From Trichosphaerium sp. ATCC 40318 (Eukaryota; Protista; Tubulinea), in NCBI GenBank assembly GCA_038496445.1, contig JALMLS010000455.1, positions 1 to 64,000 on the forward strand: a stretch of 64,000 bases of DNA. Direction: 5' to 3'. Each line of letters begins with the position of its first letter. Position 1 is the first letter of the stretch. The notes under the pieces are model-generated. The model had not been told where the DNA came from, searched no databases, and worked only from the letters and a program-made list of their open reading frames with translations. The position numbers were made by a program, and so were the translations under genes. This document shows, piece by piece, positions 1 through 62,210 of the stretch.

Positions 1-3000
1 TCATCATCATCACTTTCTTCTTCTTTACCTTTCTTATTATCTTCCTCCTCCTCTTCTTTGCTCTCTTCATCATCTTCACTCAACTGGGTCAAATCTATTT
101 TACCAGCTACAAAAAAAAACTCCAAGTAAGTCATGTGAAGTTTGCGTAAAAAATGCTATATTTCGAACAGGAAAAATACGTGTCGGCGACCGACCGCGAG
201 CTCGCGGTCACGTTCGAACACAGAAAATGTGTGTTAAAAAAATCGGCGAAAGGAAAAAATTAATATAAAACTTGCCTTTGATCAAGGTGTCACCAGACTT
301 TGATTCAGGATCAATAACCAAGGTGAGGTGCAATCTTCCATCCACTTTTTTAATCAAAGTAGGCATAGACAACAATTGGAGCATCTCTTCAGTCTTTGCC
401 TTGTAAAATTTTTGCAACAACCCCTTTCTCAAAGCCAAACTTCTTCTCCTCTTGGTTCTTGGAGTTAGAGGTTGAGTGGATTGAGAGCCATATTGAGAGG
501 AAGAGGCAGCAGGCTTCTCAGAAGAAGATTCACCATTGTTGGATGGTGCAAGTGCTAAGTAAGAACAACATGAGTACTGAGTTATGTCAAAAACAAAAAA
601 AAACAAAACTCCGAGCTATTTTTCAACAGATAAAACACGTGTCGGCAACCGACCGCGAGCTCGCGGTCTAATACGAACACGGAAAATATGTGTTTGCATT
701 TAACGTACCTCGTTTTAGTCTCTGACTGCTTCTTGTGGTCATCTTTGTTGGTCCTGACCTTTTATTTACATCATGTTTTGATGTAGAAGGCTGTGGTTTA
801 TCAGAATCTAAATAACATCAACTGGTACATTGGTTTATGAAGAAAAAAAAAAAAATGAAAAAAAAAAAGAAGGAAAAACCAACACATCGCGATCGTGTTC
901 GTACCGAGTACGATCGGTCTGTGAGTTACTACACTTTCAAACCAAGGCTCACTTGATTTTTTGAACAACCCATGTGCTCTGCTGCTTCTTCTTGGTCTTT
1001 TTTGCAGCTGGATTTCTTCTGAAACCTCATCCTCAACCTCATCCTCAACCTCATCCTCATCCTCATCTTCTTTTTTTCTCAAAATCTTCTTCTTCATCTG
1101 ATGTAGGAGGAGTTGTTTTAACCATAGGCTTCTTTTTCTTGCCTTTGCCTTTACCTTTTTTTTTATGCCTGTTTATGGCACTGCCTTCACTTGCCCTTGC
1201 ATTGGCAGTGTTCTTGGCCCTTGTATCTCTAAAAGGTAAGTAGGCATTCTCCAACATGGCTTCTAACTGAGGAGCTACAAAGGACATTAGTTTAAAAGTA
1301 AACTAGGGGAGAGAAAAAAAAAAAAAAAAGAGAAAAGAAAAGAGGTACGACCGCTACGTTCGACGAACAGGCGATTCGCGTGTAGCACCGAGCGCGACAT
1401 TGGATGTATAGTGTAAAAAAAAAAATGGCACTTACTTGCTTCTTCCACCTCAGGCAAATCCAAGCACTGCATAGACAACAGAGCAGTGTGAGAGAAGGAG
1501 AGCACATCTGCTGCTTGCTTGTACTTCATTTCTTCTATAACCATCTTGGGCAATTTTTGGCCATCTTCTGTGGTGCCGGTCCAAAGCAAGTGCAGGTCGT
1601 ACATCAAAAGCTGGCGAAATATACACGGACGCAGGCTGTTCGCGAAATTCACGTGCTCCTCCTCGGTGCTCGTGTCCCACGAGAGCTCGTACCAACCGAG
1701 CTCGTTCAGCTGTTTCAAGGCCTCGAGTTAAAGTTAGATGAGGGTGGAGGGAGAAGAAAAAAAAAAAACAACAAAAAAAAAAACTGACCGATTGGTTTTT
1801 TTTTTTTTTGTACCTGTGTGATATATTGGCTGCAGTTCTTGTACCTCTGCAAATAATAAGATTGATTGGTCTCATGATACACCCTGCAGGTCAGTGCCTT
1901 GACAAACTAAATGTACAAGTTAGGCACAAACCCTTTTTTCAAAAAAAAATATAAAAGGTACTTGACTTACTGCTATTCTGGCATGGAGAGGTAACTCTGC
2001 CCATGCAGCATGAGCCAATATTCTAGTCCTGTAGCCCACTGGATGTTTGGTGTGCTATGATGAGAGTGTGAGTGAACGGGCCGAAACTTTGTACGACACA
2101 CAAAATGCGTGTTCGAATCCGACCGCGAGCTCGCGGTCCGTACTTCGACACGTGAAATGCGTGTTCTAATAAAGACGAAAGCCTACGTACCACATTTTCA
2201 GCAGATGCAACCAATTCTGCTATCAGAGCACTGTCCAATGGCTCAAAAAACATGCCAGCCTTAACAAACTGCTTGCTTTCTTTCCAGTTGGTCACATATG
2301 GAAAGTATAGATTCATCTTAACCAAAAACTAAACAAAACAATCAGTTATAACATACAAATAAAAAAAAAATACAAACTAAAAATCGTCGGTTTTACAACA
2401 GAGTATTTTAGTGTTCGCACGTGACCGCGAGCTCGCGGTACGATATACGACACGCGAAACCTCTGTTTAAAAATACTTGCGAAAAAAAAAAAAAAAAAAA
2501 AGATTAAAATAAAAAAAAAAACAACCCTCACCTCTTTCCATTGAGCAGGACTGAGCTGAGGTTTGACTCTGCTGGCTCCCCATATCGCAAAATTCACCTT
2601 ACCTATATCTCCCGCCTCCGCTTGGTAATCGAAGACCTGGCCCGCGTCGTCGCACCACATCTTGAACAGGTGGCGGTAGCGATCCACCTTGGAGTCTGGA
2701 GTGGTCAGACTTTGCAGAAAGTTGATCTTGGTGCAGTAGATCGCTATCGCTTGCATCTTGGCGAAAGGATTTATCCACTCCACATTTTTGATTGCAAATT
2801 TGCAGGTTGTAGCTGCATTTTGTCTAAGGCAAACAAGTAAGAAACAATTGAACAATAAGGTAAGGAAAAGCAAAAAACCAGAAAAACAAAAAACAAAAAA
2901 AAGGTTCGTCGTTCGAGTTTTTTTTACGACAGGAAAATCTCGTGTTCGAACGTGACCGCGAGCTCGCGGTCGGTCGACCGACACGTAAAAAACGTGTTCG

Positions 3001-3384
3001 AAAATATTCGCGAACGTACGCCAACTCTGTCAAAAGACAGTGTGCTCCATCTCCAACTCCAAAGCCAACAATAGGGTCTGTATTGTACTCATCACACCAA
3101 ACAATAGGCATAGGGCAAAGCACAAACCTTTTGGTGAAGGTTTCATAAATAGGCATCTTTTGTATAATGTTCCTGGGGTTGACTCCTCTGACATTCAAAA
3201 AACAAGCTATGTGTGACATGTCCAAGGGGCCTTTGTAAAATGAGGGCTTCTTCACTCTCAGATACTTCTTGTTGATAGAGTTGGCAGCAATCCCTCTTAG
3301 CAGGCCCTTTTGTATTGATGGCTTTATGATGCAGCCATTCAATTTATTGGTGCCTGTCTTCATGTAGCTACATAAAAGTTAAAA

Positions 3385-3427
<43 letters not shown>

Positions 3428-4075
3428 GACGACGTTCGTTTTCGAACACGTAGAACGCGTGTTAAAAATATCGCGAAAATTGTTACTTACTCCACAAAGA
3501 GATGGAAATCTGAATCATTGCCAAAGCTCAAGGAATCTCTAAAATGGACCAAAAGAAGGGCAATGTAGTACCAAGAATCTGTGACATGAAGTCCCATGGC
3601 TGTGTAGAATATGCCAGTCCAGAGTAGCACCTGCCAATACAACTGTCTCCACTTGCAGCTTATAATCCATCCATTTTTTTCTTTCTCCTCTACCTCCGAT
3701 TCCTCATCTCCGTGTTCTCTCGGCATGGGTTCGTGCTCCTTGTAATCTCTGGTGTAGTTGCCTTCGAAGTGCATCGGCTTCCACCACTTTTCTTCGTCCG
3801 AGGAGTAGATTTTTCTGACGTCTTTGATAAACTTCTGCAGTTGGTCTACTCCTTCAACAAATGGAAATCTCTCCTAAAGAAACAAATTAATTTAAAAAAA
3901 AACAAAAAAAAAAAAACCAAAAAGCCAACGATTTTACAACAGGATATTTAAGTGTTCGTACACGACCGCGAGCTCGCGGTCACACGTTCGACACATGAAA
4001 ACTGTGTTATGAATACTTTAGGAAAAAAAATCAAAAAATAATCAAAAAAAAAAAAATCAGAAAAAAAAAAAAAAC

Positions 4076-4106
<31 letters not shown>

Positions 4107-5551
4107 AAACGAACACGGCCCGCGCGTGTATGTATCGGAAAACGTACCTTGAATGCTGCCTTCAGCTTGTTGTTAGGAGTTATTTGGGACTCCAACACAT
4201 TATCAAAGCTGGCAGCAAAAAACCCATTTAGGCATCTCTTCATCCTCTTGATGGGCATGGTTTTAGCATAAACCAACTGGTTGGCTATGATAACACCTCT
4301 ACATAGATAAATTAGTTGAAATGAATTAAAAATAAAAAAAAAAACAAAAAATAAAAAAAAATATAAATGACAGCTACGTTTACGAACATGCGCCGCGCGT
4401 GTTGCGTCGAACGCGAAATTAAATGGGTAAAAAAAAAAAAAAAAAAACCAACTTACTCAAAACCAAAGATAACATCTCTGTGTTCTCCAATGAGAGTACC
4501 CACAATTTTTGTTTCAGTGTTGTGGTTTCCATGGGTACTCACAATCATCCAACCAGGGCTTGTTGGAGCTAAAAAGAGTATTAGAAGATGGCACATTAAA
4601 TAAATATACAAACACGTTTTTTTCTGTGTGGAAAATATGACCTCGAGCTCGCGGTCGGAAACGAACACATTAAAAACGTGTTACGTACACAACGGCAAGC
4701 TTGCAGTCAGTTATAAAGCAAGACTTTCAAAAAAAAAAACGGTTTTTAAAAAAGTACACACTTTTTATGTGTACAAAAACCGACCGCGAGCTCGAGGTCA
4801 GGTACGAACACAATAAACATGTGTTGTATACCATATACCAAGCTTGCAGTCAGTTATAAAGCAAGACTTTCAAAAAAAAACGGTTTTTAAAAAAGTACAC
4901 ACTTTTTATGTGTACGAAAACCGACCGCGAGCTCGAGCCATGTACGAACACGTAAAAAGCGTGTTTATAATCGTACAGCGAGCTCGCAGTCTGTAAAAAA
5001 AGCAAAACAACAAAAAAATATTAAAAAAAAAAGTACACAATTAAATTGTGTACCAAAACCAACCGCCAACTAGCGCGACATGCGAACACGCAATATACGT
5101 GTTCTAATACCGCGACGAGCTCGCTGTTGAAAATTGAAGCAAAATAAAACAGTGTGAACCAAAACCAAACGAAAAAACAACGCACACGCGTTCTGCGTGT
5201 TACGAAACCCTCGTTTGGGTTTGGTTCTACCATGCAAAAAAACCGCATGGTAACGGAAAAATCGTACACATGAAAACCGTGTACAAAAACCGTCATTTTT
5301 TTTCGAAATTTATTTGAAAAATTAGGGGTTTTGAAAAAACCATTTAAAAGCAAAAAAACCCCCTTTATTAGTCTTTAAAAATTAAAATAAGACTAATAAA
5401 GGGGGTTTTAAAAAAAACAAAGAGTAAAAAAGAGGTTAGTACCTAGTACTCTCTTTCTCCTGAGCCTGGGCTTACCATCAGCTTCTTTGGAGGGCTCATC
5501 CTCATCAGAAAACTCAATGTTTATGAGAGAGAGGTCTTCATCTGAGCTCAT
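1..5551 (-). CDS. Large orphan multi-exon gene (at least 14 exons, >940 aa, 3' end outside the window) in an element-like region; no recognisable family
   Basis: Hand splicing gives one reading frame from MSSDEDLSLINIEF (ATG 5551). Approximate exons: 5551-5443, 4568-4457, 4298-4148, 3873-3491, 3367-3020, 2823-2532, 2328-2191, 2054-1971, 1906-1814, 1721-1440, 1302-953, 807-709, 554-276, 106-<1. Splice phases are compatible (GT-AG plus two GC-AG). One +1 shift in an A-run at ~1071-1077. Confidence 0.8.
192..4937. repeat. Dispersed intronic palindromic repeat, core GACCGCGAGCTCGCGGTC (9 copies)
   Basis: Exact copies at 192-209, 651-668, 2121-2138, 2954-2971 and 3964-3981. One-mismatch copies at 2423-2440, 4639-4656 and 4782-4799. 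A partial copy at 4923-4937. Confidence 0.95.
4698..4955. repeat. Tandem duplication of a ~142-bp unit containing the palindrome
   Basis: aagcttgcagtcagttataaagcaagactttcaaaa...gtacacactttttatgtgtac..aaccgaccgcgagctcgag occurs at ~4698 and ~4840. Confidence 0.9.
5355..5409. repeat. Perfect 21-bp inverted repeat (hairpin, 13-nt loop)
   Basis: aaaaccccctttattagtctt (5355-5375) pairs with aagactaataaagggggtttt (5389-5409). Confidence 0.95.
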
Positions 5552-5867
5552 CCTTGATTTATGAAAAGTCAAAAAAGTAAAATGAGGCTTTTTTTCCCCC
5601 AATAATTGCGTTGAGAAATAGACAGGAAAATTTCGTGTTTCGAAATGTGCACCGGAAATTTCGCCTGTTTTAAAAAAGTAAGAAAAAAATGAGAATTTGA
5701 CAGTTTGCAAGATTGTTGATGAGGTCTTGGGTTTGTAAAAAACCCTATCTTGCTGTAACCCTACAGGGAGATTGTATGTGCAAAAAACATAAAAAAAAGC
5801 CAAAAAAATCGAAAAAATTTTACAACAGGGTAGAGTAGTGTACAAAAAAATACGGTTGGTACATACT

Positions 5868-5950
5868 CCTAAACCCTAACCCTAGGCGATAATAAGCCAT
5901 AATATAAAACCTAAACCCTAATGTCAACTCAACCCTAGCCCTAACCCTAG
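5868..5950 (-). repeat. Interstitial telomere-like repeats (CCCTAA/CCCTAG on +)
   Basis: cctaaaccctaaccctag, ctaaacccta and ctcaaccctagccctaaccctag. Confidence 0.9.
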
Positions 5951-6199
5951 CTCAATAGTAGTCAATTGTAAACTTGTAAGGAAAAAAATACACAATGTCA
6001 ACACAACTCTAACATAATTTTATGTGTGTATTTAATGCAGCATAGTATAGGATGAAGCGCCATATTAATTCAAGTACAAAAATGCCTTCAGCATTTCTGC
6101 ACCTACCTGCGATGGCCTGTACAGGACAATATTCGGTGAATAAAAATCACATAGTCTCTAACCCTAATAAATATTGTGTTTGTATAAAATGTTTAATGA

Positions 6200-6292
6200 A
6201 ATTCACCACCAGAGATTTTTGAGAGAATTACACCAGAGATTTTTGTGAGAATTACACCGGAGATTTTTGTGATAATTCACCCTGTGATTTTT
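6200..6292 (+). repeat. Minisatellite, ~23-bp unit x4
   Basis: The unit (gag)aattacaccagagatttttg(t) is repeated. Confidence 0.85.
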
Positions 6293-6377
6293 GGATGAAA
6301 TTGGCCAATAATGAGGGTCTAAAATTCCTGAGATTTTTGAGAGTGATTATTGTTATTTTTACACTTTTCATTTTAGT

Positions 6378-6740
6378 ACTGTTTTATGAACCTGACATTA
6401 TATCAAATTCAAATGAAGAAAAATTTGATGACATTATGGAAATCCAATCCAACAATGCAAATTATGACAGCAATGATTATTTGAGTGTAGATCCAAACAT
6501 TGAATTGGATGTATATTTCAGTGATAAAGAATGTACAATTGAATTAAAACTTATTATTTAATAATTTCTTTTACAACCAAGTATGACTTGATCAATATGT
6601 ATGTGTCCAAGAAAAATAAAATTATTTGTGTTGTGCAAATATATGATGATCATGATGAAGAAAAGTGGACTTTACAACGAGCTTTAAAAAGAAATGTTGT
6701 GGTAGATAGTTTCTTGAAAACTATTTTACCAAAAGAATAA
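6378..6740 (+). CDS. Small spliced ORF or gene fragment between the telomere-like clusters
   Basis: ORF 6295-6561 (acidic ...MEIQSNNANYDSNDYLSVDPNIELD...) is followed by a second open segment YDLINMYVSKKNKIICVVQIYDDHDEEKWTLQRALKRNVVVDSFLKTILPKE*. Splicing is not resolved. Confidence 0.35.
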
Positions 6741-7106
6741 AAAATTATCTTAGTTACCAATAAAAGATTATCTTATATCTTATAGTCATTAATAGATATG
6801 AAAATAAATAATATCTCATTATGTTATCATATATATATAGATATGAATTTAAATTACAGTTTAACTATACATTATATACTAAGAATTTCGTGTATATGAG
6901 AAGTATATCAGTGGTAAAATGAAAACGGGATTTTGGATATAAATCCCACTAAATTCCTTTGTTTTAGGGATTTTTAAGGTAATTTGTGAAGAATTCTTTT
7001 TTTTTATTTTTTTTTATGGCAGGATTTTTGATAGAATTACCATAATATTCCCTTAAATACGGAATTTTCAGAATTATTGTACAAAATCCACCAAAAAATG
7101 TACTAA

Positions 7107-7179
7107 ATTAGTTAGGGTTAGGGTTAGGGCTAGGGTTGAGGTTTATGAAAGTACAAATTAAGTTAGGGTTAGGGTTTAG
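7107..7179 (+). repeat. Interstitial telomere-like repeats (TTAGGG/CTAGGG on +)
   Basis: gttagggttagggttagggctagggttgag and gttagggttagggtttag. Confidence 0.9.
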
Positions 7180-7729
7180 TTGTATATTTGCAAAAAACCA
7201 TCGACACCTTAGGTACATAGGTTTTTCTAGCGAACAATATCCACATGCTATTATTAGAGGTGAAAAAACCAATGGTACAGGTTAAAGTGGGTTAATCCAA
7301 AAAGTAACGGAGAACGCGTTTTAGGTGGTTTGGAAAATCACTTAAACATAAATATCTCTTACTTATCTGTTTTAGGATGATTAAAGCATTGCAACAGCGT
7401 TATTACACCATTAAAGAATGTATTTAAAGCATTAACTCCAAGTACGTTGTTTTTAAAGCTTATTTCCACTTAATTTATCAAAAAACCCTACACGTTCTTA
7501 ATTTAGCATTTACAAACACATTAATTATTGTTCAGGCTCTCAAAACCAAATGTGATCAAATTACTTCTTTCGTTTATGAAGACACGATGTATTTAACTTG
7601 TACGTGTTATTTAGGATGTTTGTATTTGTAATGATCAATAAATAAAATGACTTTGCACTAAATCTGAACCAAAGTATCGAATTAGTACAAATATTTTGTG
7701 TAATTTATAAAGTATTTTTTATTGAAATC

Positions 7730-7870
7730 TACAAAAAATACATTAAGAAATGCTATAAAGAATACATAAAGAATTCTATATAAAATACATACGCAATTCC
7801 AAAAGTAATACTTTAAGAATTCTATGGGTAATACTTATGGAATTTCATATAAATTCAATGGGAATTAAGG
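7730..7870 (+). repeat. Degenerate ~22-bp AT-rich tandem repeat
   Basis: About 5-6 aatacataaagaattctata-like units. Confidence 0.6.
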
Positions 7871-8354
7871 AAGAGTTTTTCCGTCTACTTTTCCCATAGG
7901 AAAACAGGGTGGATTACTTAAAAATTCCCATTTCTATTTTACTACTGATATATATATTTTTTTACCAAAAAAAAAGCCAATTTCAAACTCAAAATTGTTT
8001 ACATCTATGTAACTCATCACTATAAATACCTATAAATGAATTATTGCTTTTACCATGTTTACATGGCCTAATAACATATATGTACACACATAAAGTACTT
8101 AAAAATACATTTGTAAATGCAGCCTCCAAATGCAACTACATGGTAAAAATATCTCAAAATTTGCAAAAAAAAAAAGTTTGCATGTCACTCACAGGCCATG
8201 TAGTGCACAAATATCATTTTCAATGCTGCACACCATAATAATACATGCCTGTGCCTAGCGGCACAGCCATGAAAGTAGCAAAATCTAATAAAATCGAAAA
8301 AGTAGGCTAACAGCATAAATCATAGTTTTTAATCCTAATTGGCTTCTAGAGTAT

Positions 8355-8535
8355 AACCCTAATCATTATTTTACTCTATTAGGGCTAGGGTTAGGGCTGG
8401 TAATTGCAAATTTGATTTAGGGCTAGGGTTAGGGTTACAACCCTAATGATTATGAAACATCAGTTGCAGATTAGAGCTAGAGTTAGGTTTGGTATTTGCT
8501 ATACCATTTAGGGTTAGGGCTAGGGTTAACCCTAA
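8355..8535. repeat. Third cluster of telomere-like repeats in mixed orientation
   Basis: tagggctagggttaggg occurs several times, interleaved with aaccctaa. Confidence 0.9.
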
Positions 8536-8881: not shown

Positions 8882-10069
8882 TTATTGGGCTGCTTGGAAC
8901 ACTGCAGGAGCTTGTGTTACATATGTTTGAATACTCCAGTCAGTTTCTAGTTCACGTGCAGGAGAAATTTGTACACCGTCACTTGTTACACGAGCAAATT
9001 GGACCTACTTTAGTCAGCAACAATAACAGCGATAATACGCACCTTATTGATGGTTCTGGCATCTCTGTAAAATAAAACCTTTAGCGCCTTTTCGAGTAAG
9101 GCTACCGCTTCTTGCTCTGTCAATGTCGGGTTACCAGCAGCATCACCCTTCCATCCACTGCGCAAAATCGGTCTAGCTAGATATGCGCCAAACCCAGTTG
9201 CGTTCTACACCACGTCAACAAAACAAAATTATGGGAAGATACAAAATATACCAAAAAAAAAAAAACAATAAATTAGACACAAAAAACATTTTACACGTGT
9301 CAACGTAATAAAGGCAATCGCTCCGTTTCAGTACCTCTGTGTCTTTGTACGCTGTACCATATAAGTCAACATAACCGAGATATGGCTTTCCTGATACAAG
9401 ACCGGCAATGAGCAATTGATTCCACAAAGGGTTGACTTCGCTTCTACGATTATACATTACACGCTCAAGGTAATTATGGATTTCTGATGGGCTGCGAGAC
9501 TATATATAAATGTCAACAAGTACAAGACCAATGAAATTGACGCGCACAGGAGCAAACGAAAAAAAAAAAAAAAAAACAAAACGACATGAGCTTTGCGTTG
9601 CGTTCGTTTGGAAATAGTTGGTAGGCTGTACAAGCGAATATAACGTACAGAACCGTCATCGATACAATAATCAGCCGTTTCAATCTCTTCCAAAGCATCC
9701 TTGATGTACTGGAAATCAGAGTATTCGCCTGAACCGCCTACAAGGGTTCTGTTGCCAACAGACATCAAACGTTCAAGGCTACGGAAGCGAGCCATTCTAC
9801 CGTATGAGCCCAGTGTATCAGCGGCCATCATAACGCCATCTTTGTAAGTTATAGCAACAACCGAGGTACCAGTAACGTAAGGTTGACTAAAATACAGGTG
9901 GTTAGGGTATTTGGTACTAATTACGTGCGCCAGCGCCAATTAAAGCCGCGGCGGTTGCGCTTTGCTCTTTTTTTTTTTGTAATGTTTGAAGCAAATTGCG
10001 CCCTAATCGTTTTTTAACACTAAAAACGTACGTGGTGTGCGACTTTCCAGGCAAATGGGACGTAGCCAT
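8882..10069 (-). CDS. PSMB4: 20S proteasome subunit beta-7 (PSMB4/Pre4), spliced
   Basis: QPYVTGTSVVAITYKDGVMMAADTLGSYG; MYNRRSEVNPLWNQLLIAG; ATGFGAYLARPILR; VLFYRDARTINK. Confidence 0.95.
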
Positions 10070-55238: not shown

Positions 55239-56667
55239 CCTATTGAGAAATAAAAGCTTGTACATAATTATGATTTTATTGCCTACATTTATATTTCAGT
55301 CACTGCTAAGGTGCTCATTACACGTGACTCATTCCAAGGATTCATAACATCTACCCTTTGGCGCTAGTAAGTGCGTGAATGTCTTGATTTTTTAAATATT
55401 TGTAGCACAAAGGTAACAAAATCCCTTCCTGGGCACATGGCTTCTTTCGCATTTCTCTTATTTTATGGTACGTTGTGGGAAAACGTTTGGATCATTTGAA
55501 ACTATTGTGCTGAGATTCACGTAAAAAACTGACGAATGTTGTCGCCCTCGTCGTATAAAACACAATTACAAAATACAACCAAGCTTCATACAGTGTAAGA
55601 GTTCGGTCACCTTAAAAAATCAACATTTACCAATTGTTGATCACGTGACTTTGTAAAGGAAGTGTTAAGTTTTCGCAATCTATTCTACGAGCTGATTTTG
55701 CTTCATTAGCCTTTTACACAACTGTTAGTAGTGATTTGGAGCAGTTTGAGGTCAAAAAAGAAGGCACTCGCAGTGTAACAATAAAAATGTAGCTGTATTA
55801 CTTTTAAATGCTGTTTTTGGCGTTTTTGTACAGTAGAAAGCCATGTAAGAGTATTGTTACACCAAGTATTGCTTTTTCAGTTAAGTGGGGTTTAAAAAAA
55901 CCAAAACACACTCTAATAGCCCCTCATGGCATCAAATAACCACATATAAGCGTTTAACATACCTATTGCAACGATGAGACAATGTATTTCATGTAAAGCA
56001 GTAGGAGGATCAATTAAACACCTAAAACACCAAGTATTGCATTGTGTGGGCAAAAAAAAGGCAGCAGAGCTTTATTCTATGCACGACATTTTTACAAATT
56101 CAAAGAATCATAAGTTTGTATCACCTAACAAAAGAGGAGCTAAGCATAAAATGCAAAGTGTAACCTTAAGTATACAGACGGAGAAGAGGAAATTGTTAAT
56201 TTGCTGAAGGAACATTTGACTTTTATGCCAAGTGAGTTGCATCTGCTTGGGTTATGTGTAGGGCCTATTTACAGCTAAATAAAGTAGTTTAGTAACACGG
56301 AAGGGTTTTTAAAGTATTATTTTTAGACAATGATTGTTTATTGCTCAAATACTCCATTTACGCGTAGAAATCGCCATGTAATGTAGTTTAAGCAGTTTTT
56401 ATTGCTTTTATCCTTTTTTATATGAGTGCCGTATTTTGCAGCATTTTAATGGTACAGCACACCTTAGCACTACTGTTTACATCCGTCTAGTACAAAACTA
56501 GCTCGTAGAATAGATTGCATAAACTTAACATTTCCTTTATAAAAATCAGAATTCGCCTTACCTTGAACCGTTTACAACAACAGTCAGATAACCCTAGCTG
56601 ATTTATACGACATACATAAGTAGCGCACGTGTTCTCCGGACGAATACTAATTAACTTATTGTGTAGG

Positions 56668-58407: not shown

Positions 58408-59064
58408 GTATTCGCAAAAACATCTAGGATAGGGTAACACTTGCCTGCTATAAACTTAATGATTGGCAATTTGCCACTGTATAGAATTTGACATGTTTTG
58501 GTAGATTCCAGTTTGAAACTTTTCAGTCAAAAGAGTCAATAAAAGACGTAAACAATGGCAACAAGTACAGTTATTTTCTCGTTGGTACATATATTTGTTG
58601 CCTTCTTTCCCATCTAGTCATGCCACACATTGCATATTTGAGATTTCTTTTCCTTGAGGTACCACTTAGTATTCTAGAACGCCAACTAAAAACCTCCCTA
58701 ATACAACCAAATAACCACTCGTACAAATTTCAACCTTTTTCAACGGACTCGTACACACCTCAGACAACGTTTACTCTTCTAGTTGTTCTTTACAGATACA
58801 GGAGTGATTCCGGGAATCGTATATTGAGTACATTCTTTCACATTGCAGCATTCGGAGTACGAAAATATGGCGAACTTCTGTGTGTCCATAAATTTTTTAT
58901 CTTCAAGCAGTAATTTTAATCGTCTCGTAGCTTGCACAATGAATTGCAAAATCAATAATATTGGACGAGTTGTTAAAGAGGCGTGGTATGTCGATACAAA
59001 ACGCCTATTGTTACGCTATTTGACTAAAACACGTTGTTTCTAGCCGAAAAATTCCCATAATCTC

Positions 59065-59119
59065 CTCACCATAGCTCAGTTGGTAGAGCGGGAGACTGTA
59101 GATCTCTAGGTCACTGGTT
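59065..59119 (+). pseudogene. 3'-truncated tRNA-Tyr copy (identity starts in the 5' flank at 59043)
   Basis: Identical to tRNA nt 1-55; stops at GGTT of the T arm. Confidence 0.9.
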
Positions 59120-59418
59120 ACGCGTCGCATTGTGTTTACCATACTTTACCACGTGTTTTGTGAAAGAATTTGTTCTGACATTTTTTTGGTTTAAATACCG
59201 CATACCTAAGTCCACAGAAGGCGTTTTATAACATTTACGTTTATTTACAAGCCAATTCATTGAAATATTTTTTTTGACAAGCATTTATCTCGGCCAAAAT
59301 GGTGCCTAGAGAAAAACTTGAATTGTTTTTTGAGCGACAAAATATGCTTGCACAGCGTGAGTATGCAAAATGAAGTGTAGAGATGCTGTATGGAGCAAAA
59401 AAAGCGCAAAAGGCTACT

Positions 59419-59491
59419 TCTCACCAACCGGATTTGAACCAGTGACCTAGAGATCTACAGTCTCCCGCTCTACCAACTGAGCTATGGTGAG
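59419..59491 (-). tRNA. tRNA-Tyr(GTA), intronless
   Basis: CTCACCATAGCTCAGTTGGTAGAGCGGGAGACTGTAGATCTCTAGGTCACTGGTTCAAATCCGGTTGGTGAGA: 7-bp acceptor stem, GTA anticodon, A discriminator. Confidence 0.96.
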
Positions 59492-59763
59492 GAGATTATG
59501 GGAATTTTTCGGCCATGTTAGTTTGAGTTCAAAACAGCACTATACTATGTGTAACAAAAAATCTAACAATTGCTACGGCGTACAGGCCATTTCTGGATTA
59601 CTTTTCACATAACTCGTTACTTTAACAAATAGTAAGCTACATATTTTTAAATGTATTTTTTCAGCACCTTTCTGTCTTTGTGGTAACAAAGTGTTTTCGT
59701 CATTGTTAGGTGATTTAACCCAATCGCTTTTGTTGCTGTTAAGGAAAGTGACCCACCTCGTGT

Positions 59764-62210
59764 TTAAGTGGTTGTAGCGTTCATTAAAGGTATATTCTGT
59801 TGTATATGTGGTGTTGCGCCAATAAGGGGCTTGTCTTTGCTATCGCAGTTGTATGCAATTGGAACATGAGGTGCGTAATATTTAATAGTAGCAGCCAAAG
59901 AGCCAATATCGCCTTGTTTCCACCAATACGGAATATGTACTAGAATAATACCCGCTTCTTTACAATGTTGCTGTTTTTCGTAATCACGTGCTTCAAACAA
60001 AGTGGCTGGAACAGAGTACGGCACAATTCCATCATGATAATGGTGTTCGCCTAATTTTTGGAAGTATAAGTGTCGGCATAAGGAGTATAGAAGTTGGCTT
60101 GAAAAAGCGAGAATAACATACCTTGATATTCAAGCGCCAAATTTAGTGTTGATACAAATACGTCTACTGTTATAATCAAGCCAGAGCTACTACGTAAACC
60201 TATAGTATGTTCTTCTTGGACATGGTAATGAGGGAACAATACACTTGCACATTCACATAGATACCTACATAAATGTTACTCTACGATCACACTCGACAAC
60301 TAATAAAATGTTTGTAGATTATTTTTCAAAAAACCCTCGATAAATTTGTCAAAAAAAAGTGAGTCTAGAGATCAACAGTGTAAAGCATAAACGGTAAAAT
60401 TTGAAGTGTGATGAACGTTTTTTCCTCACCACACCATCAATAAATATCTTATCCTATCATCTCCCTTTCATCGACAGGGTGTTTTAGCCCATTTGGTGCT
60501 ACTAAGGACTCAACTTGTTGATGGTATTGGCGAGAAAAATATGTCATCATTATTCCAGATTTTTTGTTACACATAGTATAGTGCTGTTTTGAACTGAAAC
60601 TAACATGGCCGAAAAATTCCCATAATCTCCTCACCATAGCTCAGTTGGTAGAGCGGGAGACTGTAGATCTAGGTCACTGGTTCTGTAGAAAATAAAGAAA
60701 AGAAAAAAAATACTTTTAATCAAATATTTGTTTTGGTGAACAGCGTTGTTACCTTTGTGCTGATCTCTTAGAACTTGATGAAAATCGCTTCCAATCCCAC
60801 ATACGTGTTGGATCTAATGATTTGAGCGCTTTGGGATAATACCTTAGCAACCCTAGTCCACCAAATTTGGCAATCTGATCTGTTGATATGCGATACCATG
60901 TATCAAGGTTTGTTATCTTTAATGACTTTGATACCATTTGTAAAAAATGTCTTTGGTTTTTTTCATCGACCCAGTACCACTTGGGAGTGTTTTTACGAGT
61001 TTTTCTTGTCTTACGAAAGTCGTCTAAGAAATCTTGTTTGACTGTTTCCGGAGGGCTGTGTTCTTTCGCTTCTATTGCACGAGTGTGTTTACGGTTGTAT
61101 TCAAAGTTGTATATGGCATAAAGAGCGCTTGAAAACGAACCACCGTATCTACAACATGAAATTAAACAAAAAGGGAAAAAGAATCAAGAAGTGTGATAAA
61201 ACAGAGGGTTGGGAATAACTTTTTTATGAAGTTATTGAAAAAAACAACACGTACCTGTGTATTATGCTACCGCCTCCATGTTTGATGATTTTTGAATTTG
61301 ATACATTTGACCAATCTTCTTGGCATTTTATGTTTAATTCCTCGCCGATCAACTCCAGTTTTTGGTGTTGGTTTGATGTTTGTTCCCAGAAACTTTTTGC
61401 CATTTTTCTGCAAGAAAACCAAAATGTAAGAAATATGAACACGCGTTTTATGCATTATTTCACGTGCTTGAAGTTTAATGAATCCCAAGGATGATTCGGA
61501 AATACCTTGGTAAGTGCTGCAGGTAAGGAATCATACCTACAAGAAAAAAGATTAGAAAAGCATTATCATTGTAAAAGCACTTGCTTGTTCATGATGCTTG
61601 CTCCTCCAATGTTGATTATATCTGCTAGGCTTACGCTGTACCAACCGTCTAAATCCTTTACTAGTAGTTTCCGAGCTATCTCGTCAAACCGTGCACGTTG
61701 GTTACGCATTTTATTCCAGTAGCCTTGTGGTGTTTTTCTTTGATAAAGCTACAATCAGCGTGGACCAAAAAGTTGTCTGAACGTACTGAAAGCGTTCAGT
61801 ATTCCAGTTGTGATGTGGATAAGCAGTACGTAGAGTTTGCGCCATTGAATTATCGTGTAGGCTTTCGCAAAACGAGCCGTTAGGATTTGTTTTGTAGAAT
61901 GACTTTTGGGTACCCAATAACATTGTTTGCGCCGTTTTTAACCAACACTTTACGCCTTAGGTCGTACCATTGATCCAAATGTGTCACCTTGACACGTTCA
62001 GCAACCTTCTCTAATACACCACTTCGCACAGTGCTAGCTCATATGAGTATTTCGTAAAGCTGTAGGTTTTTGGTTCTCTTTGAATTGGATACTTATTAAA
62101 TGCCTTTATAATGGTCGCAACTATAACGTAATTGTTTTCACGTACCTTTGTAGTTCAGGCGTGAGGTAATTTACATAGTTCTTTGTGGCTCGAGTGGCAA
62201 TGCATGCCAT
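59764..62210 (-). CDS. Tandem W-rich repeat protein with a C-terminal PD-(D/E)XK/RAP-like domain (paralogue 2)
   Basis: Repeats (LKITNLDTWYRISTDQIAKFGGLGLL; LNIKCQEDWSNVSNSKIIKHGGGSII); C-terminus ITVDVFVSTLNLALEYQGEHHY...RDYEKQQHCKEAGIILVHIPYWW. Confidence 0.82.
60630..60683 (+). pseudogene. Second 3'-truncated tRNA-Tyr copy, inside an intron (identity starts in the 5' flank at ~60557)
   Basis: Inverted copy of ~59436-59563 with a 2-nt deletion; ends at GGTTC. Confidence 0.9.

What the first reader, a model, noticed from the sequence alone, without database searches (positions are those of the whole stretch)
140..5130. 18-bp perfect palindrome repeated through the introns of one orphan gene
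Seen: GACCGCGAGCTCGCGGTC occurs 9 times (exact, one-mismatch or partial), always in introns of the 1-5551 gene and never elsewhere in the window. Each core sits in a longer imperfect dyad (GTGTTCGAAC..core..CGACACGT), and many are flanked by poly(A) tracts. The copies at 192 and 2954 share ~45 bp in opposite orientation. The core is far better conserved than the arms, as expected for a selected binding site. Inference: either an operator array for a dimeric element-encoded protein, analogous to the VANC anti-silencing motifs in non-coding parts of Arabidopsis VANDAL transposons, or a palindromic MITE/introner-like unit that colonised the introns.
Basis: partly seen in the sequence, partly recalled or inferred. 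Interest (0 to 1): 0.8.

Follow-up and report, generated by a model that had tools for sequence, protein, structure and literature searches.

The report
Palindromic intron family filling one gene
Eleven of the thirteen introns of one gene with no known relatives are copies of the same small hairpin-forming element built around a perfectly kept 18-base palindrome, so this looks like a self-copying intron family that multiplied inside a single gene, a rare and testable case of how new introns arise.

Summary
The 18-mer occurs 5 times exactly, 3 times with one mismatch and once with three. There are also 2-3 partial or CpG-decayed copies. All lie in introns of a minus-strand gene (ATG 5551, running off the window at 1), and none lies in the other 58 kb.

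The 18-mer is the centre of a regular 68-69-nt module: a 17-nt hairpin (ACAC-N9-GTGT), 8-9 nt, the core, 8 nt, then a second hairpin. Homology extends to about 110 nt.

- Six introns hold one full module.
- Intron 1 holds a 143-nt tandem array of modules.
- Four more introns hold hairpin-only relatives.
- Only two short introns (64 and 92 nt) have no module.

Similarity between introns stops at the splice sites. A GTACGT donor belongs to the repeat. There are no target-site duplications and no exon duplication. The core is 98% identical between copies, against 40-54% for the flanks.

Best reading: a structured, symmetrical introner-like intron family (closest to fungal introner-like elements and Hypoxylaceae "sister introns") that multiplied within one orphan gene. 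The VANC-like operator idea is untested and less supported, and a classical MITE is contradicted. Whether the family exists elsewhere in the genome could not be tested.

The parts
1..5551 (-). Host gene. ATG at 5551, at least 14 exons, runs off the window at position 1. Introns (+ coordinates): I1 5475-4569, I2 4456-4299, I3 4147-3874, I4 3490-3368, I5 3019-2824, I6 2531-2329, I7 2190-2055, I8 1970-1907, I9 1813-1722, I10 1435-1275, I11 952-808, I12 708-555, I13 275-107 (or donor at 293).
   Evidence: The reading frame is kept across all 13 introns with canonical splice sites. No Pfam family matches any exon except a sub-threshold AP3D1 match on exon 11 (16.3 bits against a cut-off of 28.2). 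There is no PDB relative. Exon 5 has 0 hits among 1.84 billion representatives. There are no viral relatives.
150..258 (-). Full unit in intron 13 (core 192-209, exact). Its centre is in the 'type 2' orientation.
609..712 (-). Full unit in intron 12 (core 651-668, exact). The GTACGT donor abuts the unit.
2080..2188 (-). Full unit in intron 7 (core 2121-2138, exact). The intron is only 136 nt, so it is almost entirely unit.
   Evidence: fold -34.4 kcal/mol, z -3.85
2381..2490 (-). Full unit in intron 6 (core 2423-2440, one mismatch). The whole intron is homologous to the 3' two-thirds of intron 3.
   Evidence: 2329-2518 vs 3874-4056, 75%
2912..3019 (-). Full unit in intron 5 (core 2954-2971, exact). 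Its centre is the exact inverse of that of intron 13.
   Evidence: (I9)
3922..4031 (-). Full unit in intron 3 (core 3964-3981, exact).
4602..5147 (-). Tandem array in intron 1. A 141-143-nt repeat occurs 2.3-2.7 times. Each repeat has one near-intact core (4639, 4782, 4923) and one CpG-decayed core (4691; also 4974). A degenerate core lies at 5115. The sub-period from core to core is 51-52 nt.
4386..4402 (-). Hairpin-only module in intron 2 (ACAC-N9-ATGT). It is homologous to the module at 4113-4129.
4113..4129 (-). Hairpin-only module in the 5' part of intron 3.
3446..3462 (-). Hairpin-only module in intron 4. The intron reads like intron 5 without its centre and second hairpin.
   Evidence: 3434-3475, E 7.7e-5
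1367..1383 (-). Degenerate hairpin module in intron 10.
882..898 (-). Hairpin module in intron 11.
5035..5282 (-). Four further 17-nt hairpin modules in the 5' half of intron 1 (5035-5051, 5086-5102, 5184-5200, 5266-5282).
5622..5841 (-). Two weak partial modules upstream of the ATG (5622-5638 and 5825-5841).
   Evidence: E 0.6-1.5, so only suggestive

Best explanation
The 18-mer is the centre of a small foldback module: hairpin, linker, 18-bp palindrome, linker, hairpin. The module is 68-69 nt, with about 110 nt of homology including its flanks. It forms the body of most introns of one lineage-specific gene.

I read these introns as paralogues of one another. They are a structured, internally symmetrical, introner-like intron family that multiplied within this gene. 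A canonical copy is about 150-200 nt:
- a GTACGT donor;
- the module;
- a T-rich tail of about 50 nt carrying the branch site and AG.

The family then evolved by processes typical of hairpin-prone DNA:
- 52-nt slippage and a 143-nt tandem duplication in intron 1;
- loss of the centre, giving hairpin-only introns;
- inversion of the roughly 35-nt centre between the flanking inverted hairpin stems.

Shown:
- the anatomy;
- confinement to the introns of this gene within the window;
- homology ending at the splice sites;
- the lack of TSDs and of exon duplication;
- extreme conservation of the core relative to its flanks.

Inferred:
- that the copies arose by duplication of introns (an RNA-mediated or repair-mediated 'seamless' insertion, as proposed for fungal introner-like elements) rather than by DNA transposition;
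- that the core and the ACAC/GTGT stems are kept because a hairpin or a sequence-specific factor is needed for copying, splicing or some host function.
For: Regular module in six stand-alone units and in intron 1: 17 + 8/9 + 18 + 8 + 17 nt.

11 of 13 introns carry the module or its hairpin. The two module-free introns are the shortest, at 64 and 92 nt.

All 30 intragenic repeat pairs lie in introns:
- I6/I3 homology ends exactly at the 3' splice sites (2329/3874);
- I7/I5 homology ends at the 5' splice sites (2187/3020).

GTACGT lies 0-25 nt upstream of the module in I5, I7 and I12, and inside the intron-1 repeats.

Intron 7 (136 nt) is too short to have existed without the unit.

No junction repeats exceed chance. 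There is no exon-exon similarity.

Units fold at -23.5 to -34.4 kcal/mol, with z from -1.2 to -4.6.

The outer parts of the six stand-alone units align better in the gene's orientation in 7 of 8 cross-type comparisons. Leave-one-out profiles favour the gene's orientation by 11-26 bits for I3, I5, I6 and I7.

Neighbouring genes have ordinary introns with the same GTACGT/poly-T style but no module.

Literature: fungal introner-like elements and Hypoxylaceae sister introns share the symmetry with a central palindrome, the seamless insertion without TSD, and the sense-only orientation (PMC8469720; PMC3609843).
Against: - Known introner-like families are spread over many unrelated genes. Here all copies sit in one gene, and none is found in about 30 or more neighbouring intron candidates.
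- Same-gene intron duplications are known but rare (at most 16 per fungal species, half with exon duplication).
- The 3' tails of the introns are homologous only in some pairs.
- Orientation evidence is partly confounded by the T-richness of the sense strand. It is ambiguous for the intron-1 copies, and for I12/I13 when the centre is included.
- Covariation support for a selected RNA or DNA structure is weak, and there is no G-U versus A-C strand asymmetry.
- There is no transcript evidence for the splicing model.
- The propagation mechanism is not shown.
Confidence: 0.6

Rival explanations
1. Cis-regulatory or operator array. The 18-bp palindrome is a binding site for a dimeric DNA-binding protein, possibly the gene's own product. 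It is kept by selection in each intron, as VANC motifs are in VANDAL transposons. This can coexist with an introner origin.
For: There is a sharp step from a 98%-identical core to linkers at about 45-55% identity. All 24 CpGs of the six stand-alone cores are intact, while cores in the intron-1 array have decayed by CpG transitions. The motif is confined to non-coding parts of one gene, including weak partial modules upstream of the ATG. The core contains everted CCG-N8-CGG half-sites; the link to binding sites is from my own knowledge and is only a lead.
Against: No DNA-binding or transposase domain is found on any exon, and there are no relatives at all. The site is embedded at fixed spacing between two hairpins that are themselves conserved and that make up the intron body. 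One site per intron at about 50 nt from the 3' splice site looks like intron paralogy, not site accumulation. No TE hallmarks surround the gene in the visible 5' flank.
Confidence: 0.15
2. A palindromic MITE (non-autonomous DNA transposon) hopped locally into pre-existing introns of this gene.
For: The module is a foldback with inverted arms, as in many MITEs. Local reinsertion is typical of cut-and-paste elements (established knowledge). The centre occurs in both orientations (I9).
Against: There are no TSDs. The best-conserved part is the centre, not the termini. Homology reaches the splice sites and includes the donor. Intron 7 would be only about 26 nt without the unit. There are no copies in intergenic DNA or in neighbouring introns.
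Confidence: 0.1
3. The core is identical between copies not because of function but because of concerted evolution. Short-tract gene conversion or hairpin-templated repair is nucleated at the perfect palindrome, which can pair in either orientation. This keeps homogenising the cores of copies lying within 5 kb.
For: Introns 13 and 5 share a 35-nt block at 100% in inverted orientation, while their outer hairpins are only 12/17 and 14/17 identical (I9). This pattern fits a recent exchange of the centre. The cores at 4639 and 4782 are mirror images of each other.
Against: In four other copies the conserved tract would have to be only about 18 bp with no flanking homology. That is shorter than the usual minimal substrates for conversion (established knowledge). 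The decayed cores in intron 1 were not corrected.
Confidence: 0.1
4. Each intron hosts a small structured RNA gene, as in a snoRNA or miRNA host gene with one RNA per intron.
For: There is one unit per intron in six introns, and it ends about 50 nt from the 3' splice site in four of them (my reading). The predicted hairpins are stable.
Against: No Rfam family matches at the gathering score or at E<=1. I saw no C/D or H/ACA boxes. The most conserved part would be the apical stem-loop, unlike in miRNA precursors. The copies are near-identical rather than diversified. Covariation is weak.
Confidence: 0.05

Closest known systems
Fungal introner-like elements (ILEs; Dothideomycetes) and the 'same-gene duplication' class of near-identical introns (PMC3609843)
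   Same: These are multi-copy spliceosomal introns. They are longer than regular introns, have stable predicted secondary structure and canonical splice signals, and degenerate towards ordinary introns. Duplicates within one gene are a recognised class.
   Different: ILEs occur in hundreds of copies across unrelated genes. Same-gene duplicates number at most 16 per species, and half include duplicated exons. Here 11 of 13 introns of one gene belong to one family without exon duplication. The host looks like a protist, not a fungus: best proteasome hits are 59-69% to Amoebozoa, Heterolobosea and Rhizaria.
Internally symmetrical 'sister' (stw)introns of Hypoxylaceae (PMC8469720)
   Same: They have terminal inverted repeats of 45-55 nt meeting at a central palindrome (10 nt there, 18 nt here). 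Integration is seamless without TSDs. The intron is functional only on the coding strand, and a hairpin or dsRNA is predicted.
   Different: There the palindrome is A/T-rich and not reported as the best-conserved part. Copies sit in different genes and some are nested stwintrons. Here each arm is itself a 17-nt hairpin, the GC-rich core is nearly invariant, and its roughly 35-nt centre is found in both orientations.
MITE-type Introners (Micromonas, Aureococcus, dinoflagellates and others; PMC9860276)
   Same: They are short non-autonomous repeats that supply splice signals and create introns. Many have TIRs.
   Different: Many of those families show TSDs of 3-9 bp and act genome-wide. Here no TSD is seen, and the copies are confined to one gene in the window.
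Intron propagation by reverse splicing proposed for Oikopleura dioica (reviewed in PMC4122922)
   Same: Near-identical introns are explained by an RNA-mediated copy mechanism, which predicts sense orientation, no TSD and local spread.
   Different: That mechanism has never been demonstrated. Here only parts of the introns are alike, and the organism is unrelated.
VANC-bound motif arrays in non-coding parts of Arabidopsis VANDAL transposons
   Same: A short motif is repeated in introns and other non-coding parts of the unit that would encode its binding protein.
   Different: The gene here shows no transposon context or domain. The motif is a long perfect palindrome held in a hairpin scaffold that constitutes the intron. 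Binding is untested.

Membership tests
Introner-like elements / proliferating symmetrical introns | Several spliceosomal introns share sequence, and the similarity is bounded by the splice sites | tested here: met
   the repeat pairs lie wholly in introns. I6/I3 similarity ends at the acceptors and I7/I5 similarity ends at the donors.
Introner-like elements / proliferating symmetrical introns | Longer than regular introns, with a stable predicted secondary structure | tested here: met
   Unit-bearing introns are 136-274 nt (907 nt for I1), against 64 and 92 nt for unit-free ones. Folds are -23.5 to -34.4 kcal/mol; z is below -2.5 in 4 of 6.
Introner-like elements / proliferating symmetrical introns | Seamless insertion: no target-site duplication, functional in the sense orientation only | tested here: met
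   No junction repeats exceed chance. The outer parts are co-oriented with the gene, with the caveat of T-rich bias.
Introner-like elements / proliferating symmetrical introns | Many copies in unrelated genes across the genome | not testable with these tools
   Only the window is available. There are 0 copies in the other 58 kb. The genome is absent from the protein and contig collections.
Introner-like elements / proliferating symmetrical introns | Demonstrated recent gain (intron absent at the same position in relatives) | not testable with these tools
   No orthologue or paralogue of the gene was found.
MITE / DNA-transposon-derived Introner | Target-site duplications flanking the element | tested here: not met
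   the longest shared junction strings are 3-6 nt, within the random distribution.
MITE / DNA-transposon-derived Introner | Terminal inverted repeats that are the best-conserved part | tested here: not met
   Inverted arms exist, but conservation peaks at the centre, not the termini.
VANC-type operator array of a transposon | The host gene lies in a transposon (TIRs, transposase, multiple copies) | tested here: inconclusive
   No TE domain is found on any exon, and there is no second copy in the window. The 3' end of the gene is off the window, and the 5' flank is AT-rich with telomere-like repeats.
VANC-type operator array of a transposon | The encoded protein binds the repeated motif | not testable with these tools
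   This needs EMSA, DAP-seq or ChIP.
Intronic snoRNA/miRNA host gene | The units match a known RNA family or carry C/D or H/ACA boxes | tested here: not met
   Rfam at the gathering score and at E<=1 gave no relevant match.
Same-gene duplication through duplicated exon repeats (as in the Cryptococcus case cited in PMC3609843) | Exons flanking the similar introns are also similar | tested here: not met
   Repeat pairs contain 0-10 exon nt. Exon peptides share only acidic low-complexity matches.

The most novel reading that the evidence does not exclude
A gene-restricted, self-copying spliceosomal intron family carries its own recognition element. In this reading the invariant 18-bp palindrome, held between two hairpins, is bound or cut by a specific factor. 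That factor could conceivably be the orphan gene's own product or a hairpin-specific enzyme. It would drive both the copying of the intron into new sites of the same gene and the observed flipping of the centre. This would give a concrete molecular handle on how spliceosomal introns are gained.
Probability: 0.15. Interest if true: 0.85.

Novelty: new variant of a known kind. Interest (0 to 1): 0.55.

Why it matters
How new spliceosomal introns arise is still argued. Transposon-type Introners explain some cases. For the symmetrical, TSD-free introner-like elements no mechanism has been demonstrated.

This gene has no detectable relatives, and almost all of its introns are copies of one small module. 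It therefore looks like a compact natural experiment:
- it shows copies at several stages (full, tandem, hairpin-only, decayed);
- it shows inversion of the centre;
- it isolates an 18-bp element that is kept far better than everything around it, which can be mutated, pulled down or footprinted.

If the family proves to be genome-wide, this is just a well-preserved example of a known kind.

Tried and rejected
Protein identity:
- Pfam on nine exon pieces gave no significant match, only a sub-threshold AP3D1 match on exon 11 (16.3 bits against a cut-off of 28.2).
- PDB sequence search on exons 4, 6 and 10 gave nothing meaningful.
- An exhaustive HMMER search of exon 5 against 1.84 billion representatives gave 0 hits.
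- Back-translated scans of IMG/VR with exons 4 and 6 gave no relatives.

Other copies of the element:
- The flank-anchored pattern gave 0 hits in viral and metagenome contigs.
- The bare 18-mer gave 120 or more metagenome hits and 6 viral hits. All are single hits in contigs of 51-78% GC without flank similarity, so they are chance matches in bacterial DNA.
- A literature search for the motif found nothing.

Organism: the neighbouring proteasome beta-7 gene has only 59-69% identity to any protein on record. The genome is therefore not in the collections, and genome-wide mapping was impossible. The window is not human-like.

RNA gene: Rfam gave nothing relevant.

RNA versus DNA level:
- G-U versus A-C mismatch counts in 28 hairpins are balanced, 12 to 10.
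- Covariation is weak and does not discriminate the three-hairpin model from the long foldback.

Other ideas tested:
- That neighbouring introns are old members of the family: the profile search gave no hit better than E=1, and inspection of 30 intron candidates showed no module.
- TSDs: none.
- Exon repeats: none.

My first orientation test was biased by training on the tested copies. The leave-one-out repeat had a grouping slip that in effect trained on type-1 units only. It revealed that orientation is ambiguous when the flipped centre is included. One search, using the outer parts only, settles it for the six stand-alone units but not for the intron-1 copies.

Full report
**1. Observation**

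The 18-mer GACCGCGAGCTCGCGGTC is present as follows:
- exact at 192, 651, 2121, 2954 and 3964;
- one mismatch at 2423, 4639 and 4782;
- three mismatches at 4974.

Dinucleotide-preserving shuffles expect 0 matches. Looser searches add a partial core at 4927, a degenerate one at 5115, and a CpG-decayed one at 4691 (GCAAGCTTGC in place of GCGAGCTCGC).

Nothing matches in 5552-64000. A self-BLAST of the window finds 34 repeat pairs. Thirty lie inside 1-5600, none links the gene to the rest, and the other four concern a tRNA region and one small inverted repeat.

**2. The gene**

The window is ordinary, gene-dense eukaryotic DNA of 39% GC. It holds a proteasome beta subunit, a CtIP-like gene, an LSG1-like GTPase, a Sin3-like gene, a PSMD3-like gene and a tRNA-Tyr. 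It is not human-like. The best matches of the proteasome subunit are only 59-69% identical and come from Amoebozoa, Heterolobosea, Foraminifera and unnamed environmental sequences. The organism is therefore an unplaced protist-like eukaryote that is absent from the collections.

The gene that holds the repeats is on the minus strand, starts at 5551 and runs off the window at 1. Reading the minus strand, I get 14 exons and 13 introns. All have canonical boundaries:
- donors are GTACGT or GTAAGT in nine introns, GTGAG in two and GTACAA in one;
- I13 uses either a GC donor at 275 or a GT donor at 293, both in frame.

The reading frame is kept across every junction. The one exception is a one-base shift inside exon 11, next to an A7 run.

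No exon matches a Pfam family; the only listing is a sub-threshold AP3D1 match on exon 11. No exon matches a solved structure. Exon 5 (115 aa) has no hit at E<=0.001 among 1.84 billion cluster representatives. Exons 4 and 6 have no relatives in IMG/VR. 'Orphan' is a fair description as far as exon-wise searches go. The joined protein was not searched (see referred steps).

**3. Anatomy of the repeat**

Seen on the sense strand, the core always sits in the same frame:
- a 17-nt hairpin ACAC-N9-GTGT with a T-rich loop;
- 8 or 9 nt;
- the 18-mer;
- 8 nt;
- a second 17-nt hairpin that usually ends CTGT.

The total is 68-69 nt. Homology continues about 20 nt upstream (TTTCGC..TATTTTT) and about 15 nt downstream (TGTAAAA..CG), giving about 110 nt.

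The distribution over the introns is as follows.
- Six introns (I3, I5, I6, I7, I12, I13) hold exactly one full unit.
- Intron 1 (907 nt) holds a 141-143-nt tandem repeat (2.3-2.7 copies). In it, near-intact cores alternate with decayed cores at a 51-52-nt sub-period. It also holds four further hairpins.
- Introns 2, 4, 10 and 11, and the 5' part of intron 3, hold only the hairpin with its flanks. Intron 4 reads like intron 5 without the centre and second hairpin.
- Only introns 8 (64 nt) and 9 (92 nt) have no module.

The small hairpin pattern occurs 22 times in the gene and 11 times in the remaining 58 kb, where chance predicts about 14.

**4. Are these paralogous introns, or insertions into introns?**

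Several results point to paralogous introns.
- All 30 repeat pairs fall in introns.
- The I6/I3 alignment (191 columns, 75%) ends exactly at the two 3' splice sites (2329 and 3874). The I7/I5 alignment ends at the two 5' splice sites (2187 and 3020).
- GTACGT lies 0-25 nt upstream of the module in I5, I7 and I12. It is also repeated, unused, inside the intron-1 array, so the donor belongs to the repeat.
- The unit ends 48-57 nt from the acceptor in four of six introns.
- Intron 7 is 136 nt, of which about 110 nt is unit, so it could not have been an intron without it.
- Junction windows share only 3-6 nt, like random pairs, so there are no target-site duplications.
- Exon peptides are unrelated to each other apart from acidic runs. 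This excludes duplication of exon-intron blocks.

The introns themselves are therefore the duplicated entities.

**5. Orientation and the flipped centre**

Positions 187-221 and 2942-2976 are 100% complementary over 35 nt (I9).

The outer parts do not follow this inversion. With the centre excluded, the hairpins plus 22 nt of I12 and I13 align better with those of I3, I5, I6 and I7 in the direct orientation in 7 of 8 comparisons, with one tie. The asymmetric ACAC (left) against CTGT (right) signature is the same in both groups. Leave-one-out profiles favour the gene's orientation by 11-26 bits for I3, I5, I6 and I7.

With the centre included, I12, I13 and the intron-1 copies are ambiguous. The T-richness of the sense strand (44% T) inflates direct scores. 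I therefore rate 'outer parts co-oriented, roughly 35-nt centre inverted' as moderately supported for the six stand-alone units and open for intron 1. An inversion between the flanking inverted stems (GTGT...ACAC) is the simplest cause.

**6. Conservation**

Across the six stand-alone units:
- the core has 1 variant cell of 108, a mean pairwise identity of 98%;
- the adjoining 8-nt linkers have 42 of 96;
- the 45-nt flanks have 196 of 540 (identity 40-54%, ungapped; Fisher p about 1e-15 to 1e-17).

All 24 core CpGs are intact, whereas cores in the intron-1 array show CpG-to-TpG/CpA decay. The conserved islands are the core, the ACAC/GTGT stems and little else.

Such a step is not expected from neutral decay of duplicated DNA. 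It needs one of three things:
- selection on the core, for copying, for splicing or RNA structure, or for binding of a factor;
- repeated homogenisation;
- very recent exchange of centres.

The 35-nt identity between I13 and I5, amid diverged hairpins, suggests the third occurred at least once.

**7. Structure**

The units fold either as three hairpins or as one long foldback, at -23.5 to -34.4 kcal/mol (z -1.2 to -4.6).

Pair counts on eight units give 85% (three hairpins) and 88% (foldback) paired cells. A few double changes slightly favour the foldback. Numbers are small and the sequences are related. G-U and A-C mismatches are balanced. Nothing therefore tells RNA-level from DNA-level constraint. 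Rfam finds no known RNA family.

**8. Distribution**

A profile of nine units finds only the gene, plus two very weak partial matches just upstream of the ATG. Nothing elsewhere scores better than E=1.

About 30 strong donor-plus-poly-T intron candidates in the neighbouring genes have the same general style (GTACGT, T-runs) but no module.

Public collections gave no related copy. Because the genome is not in those collections, I could not test whether the family exists elsewhere in the genome. This is the main open point.

**9. Interpretation**

The features are:
- multi-copy introns bounded by splice sites;
- internal symmetry around a central palindrome;
- stable folds;
- no TSDs;
- sense orientation;
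- degeneration towards ordinary introns.

These are the features of fungal introner-like elements and of the symmetrical 'sister' introns of Hypoxylaceae (PMC3609843; PMC8469720). They are not the features of TSD-bearing MITE-type Introners (PMC9860276).

Three things are unusual:
- 11 of 13 introns of a single orphan gene belong to the family, while same-gene duplicates are rare elsewhere;
- the GC-rich centre, not the termini, is nearly invariant;
- the centre occurs in both orientations.

I therefore file it as a new variant of a known kind. It works like an introner-like element. Membership in the genome-wide sense is untested.

The VANC-like operator reading remains possible as an added layer, but it has no positive support beyond the conservation of the core.

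**10. Confidence and scores**

| Explanation | Confidence |
|---|---|
| Introner-like intron family multiplied within the gene | 0.6 |
| Operator or binding-site array | 0.15 |
| Local MITE | 0.1 |
| Conservation by conversion only | 0.1 |
| Intronic RNA genes | 0.05 |

Interest is 0.55. It would be higher if genome-wide mapping shows the family is restricted to this gene, and lower if it is a common family.

Noticed in passing
window 5874-8535: Telomere-like repeats occur almost only here. CCCTAA-type runs lie at 5874-6167 and TTAGGG/CTAGGG-type runs at 7112-8525. They point outward around an AT-rich (GC 28%), ORF-poor spacer between the orphan gene and the proteasome gene. This could be the scar of an inserted linear DNA or an old chromosome-end rearrangement.
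   Followed up: partly
window ~1063-1080 (exon 11): The reading frame shifts by one base at or near an A7 run. A stop (TGA 1065-1063) closes the upstream frame, yet about 197 downstream codons stay open in the shifted frame through three more correctly phased introns. This is either a homopolymer assembly error or a very recent frameshift.
   Followed up: partly
window 5355-5409 (intron 1): A 21-bp perfect inverted repeat is separated by 13 nt and is unrelated in sequence to the 18-mer family. It gives sub-threshold Rfam matches to PK-repZ and CopA simply because it is a long hairpin.
   Followed up: partly
window 59043-60683: tRNA-Tyr(GTA) at 59419-59491 lies within nested inverted duplications. 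59043-59119 matches 59437-59513 at 100%, and 59451-59564 matches 60557-60670 at 99%. The first duplication produces a second, weak tRNA-like Rfam hit at 59065-59122.
   Followed up: partly
window 6207-6293: A 24-bp tandem repeat (3.6 copies, 89% matches) lies in the AT-rich spacer.
   Followed up: no
window 1560-1721 and 2600-2720 (exons 10 and 6): Patches of CpG- and GC-rich codons lie inside otherwise A/T-leaning exons of the orphan gene (reading), so codon usage is mosaic. The cause is unknown.
   Followed up: no
window 55650-55700 vs 56493-56543: A 51-nt inverted repeat (88%) is the only other repeat pair in the window outside the gene and the tRNA region.
   Followed up: no
window 9206-9335, 9497-9626 and other neighbour introns: Introns of neighbouring genes share the general style of the orphan gene's introns: a GTAC(G/T) donor, a CG-containing stretch, then a long T-run. 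They have no detectable homology to the module.
   Followed up: yes
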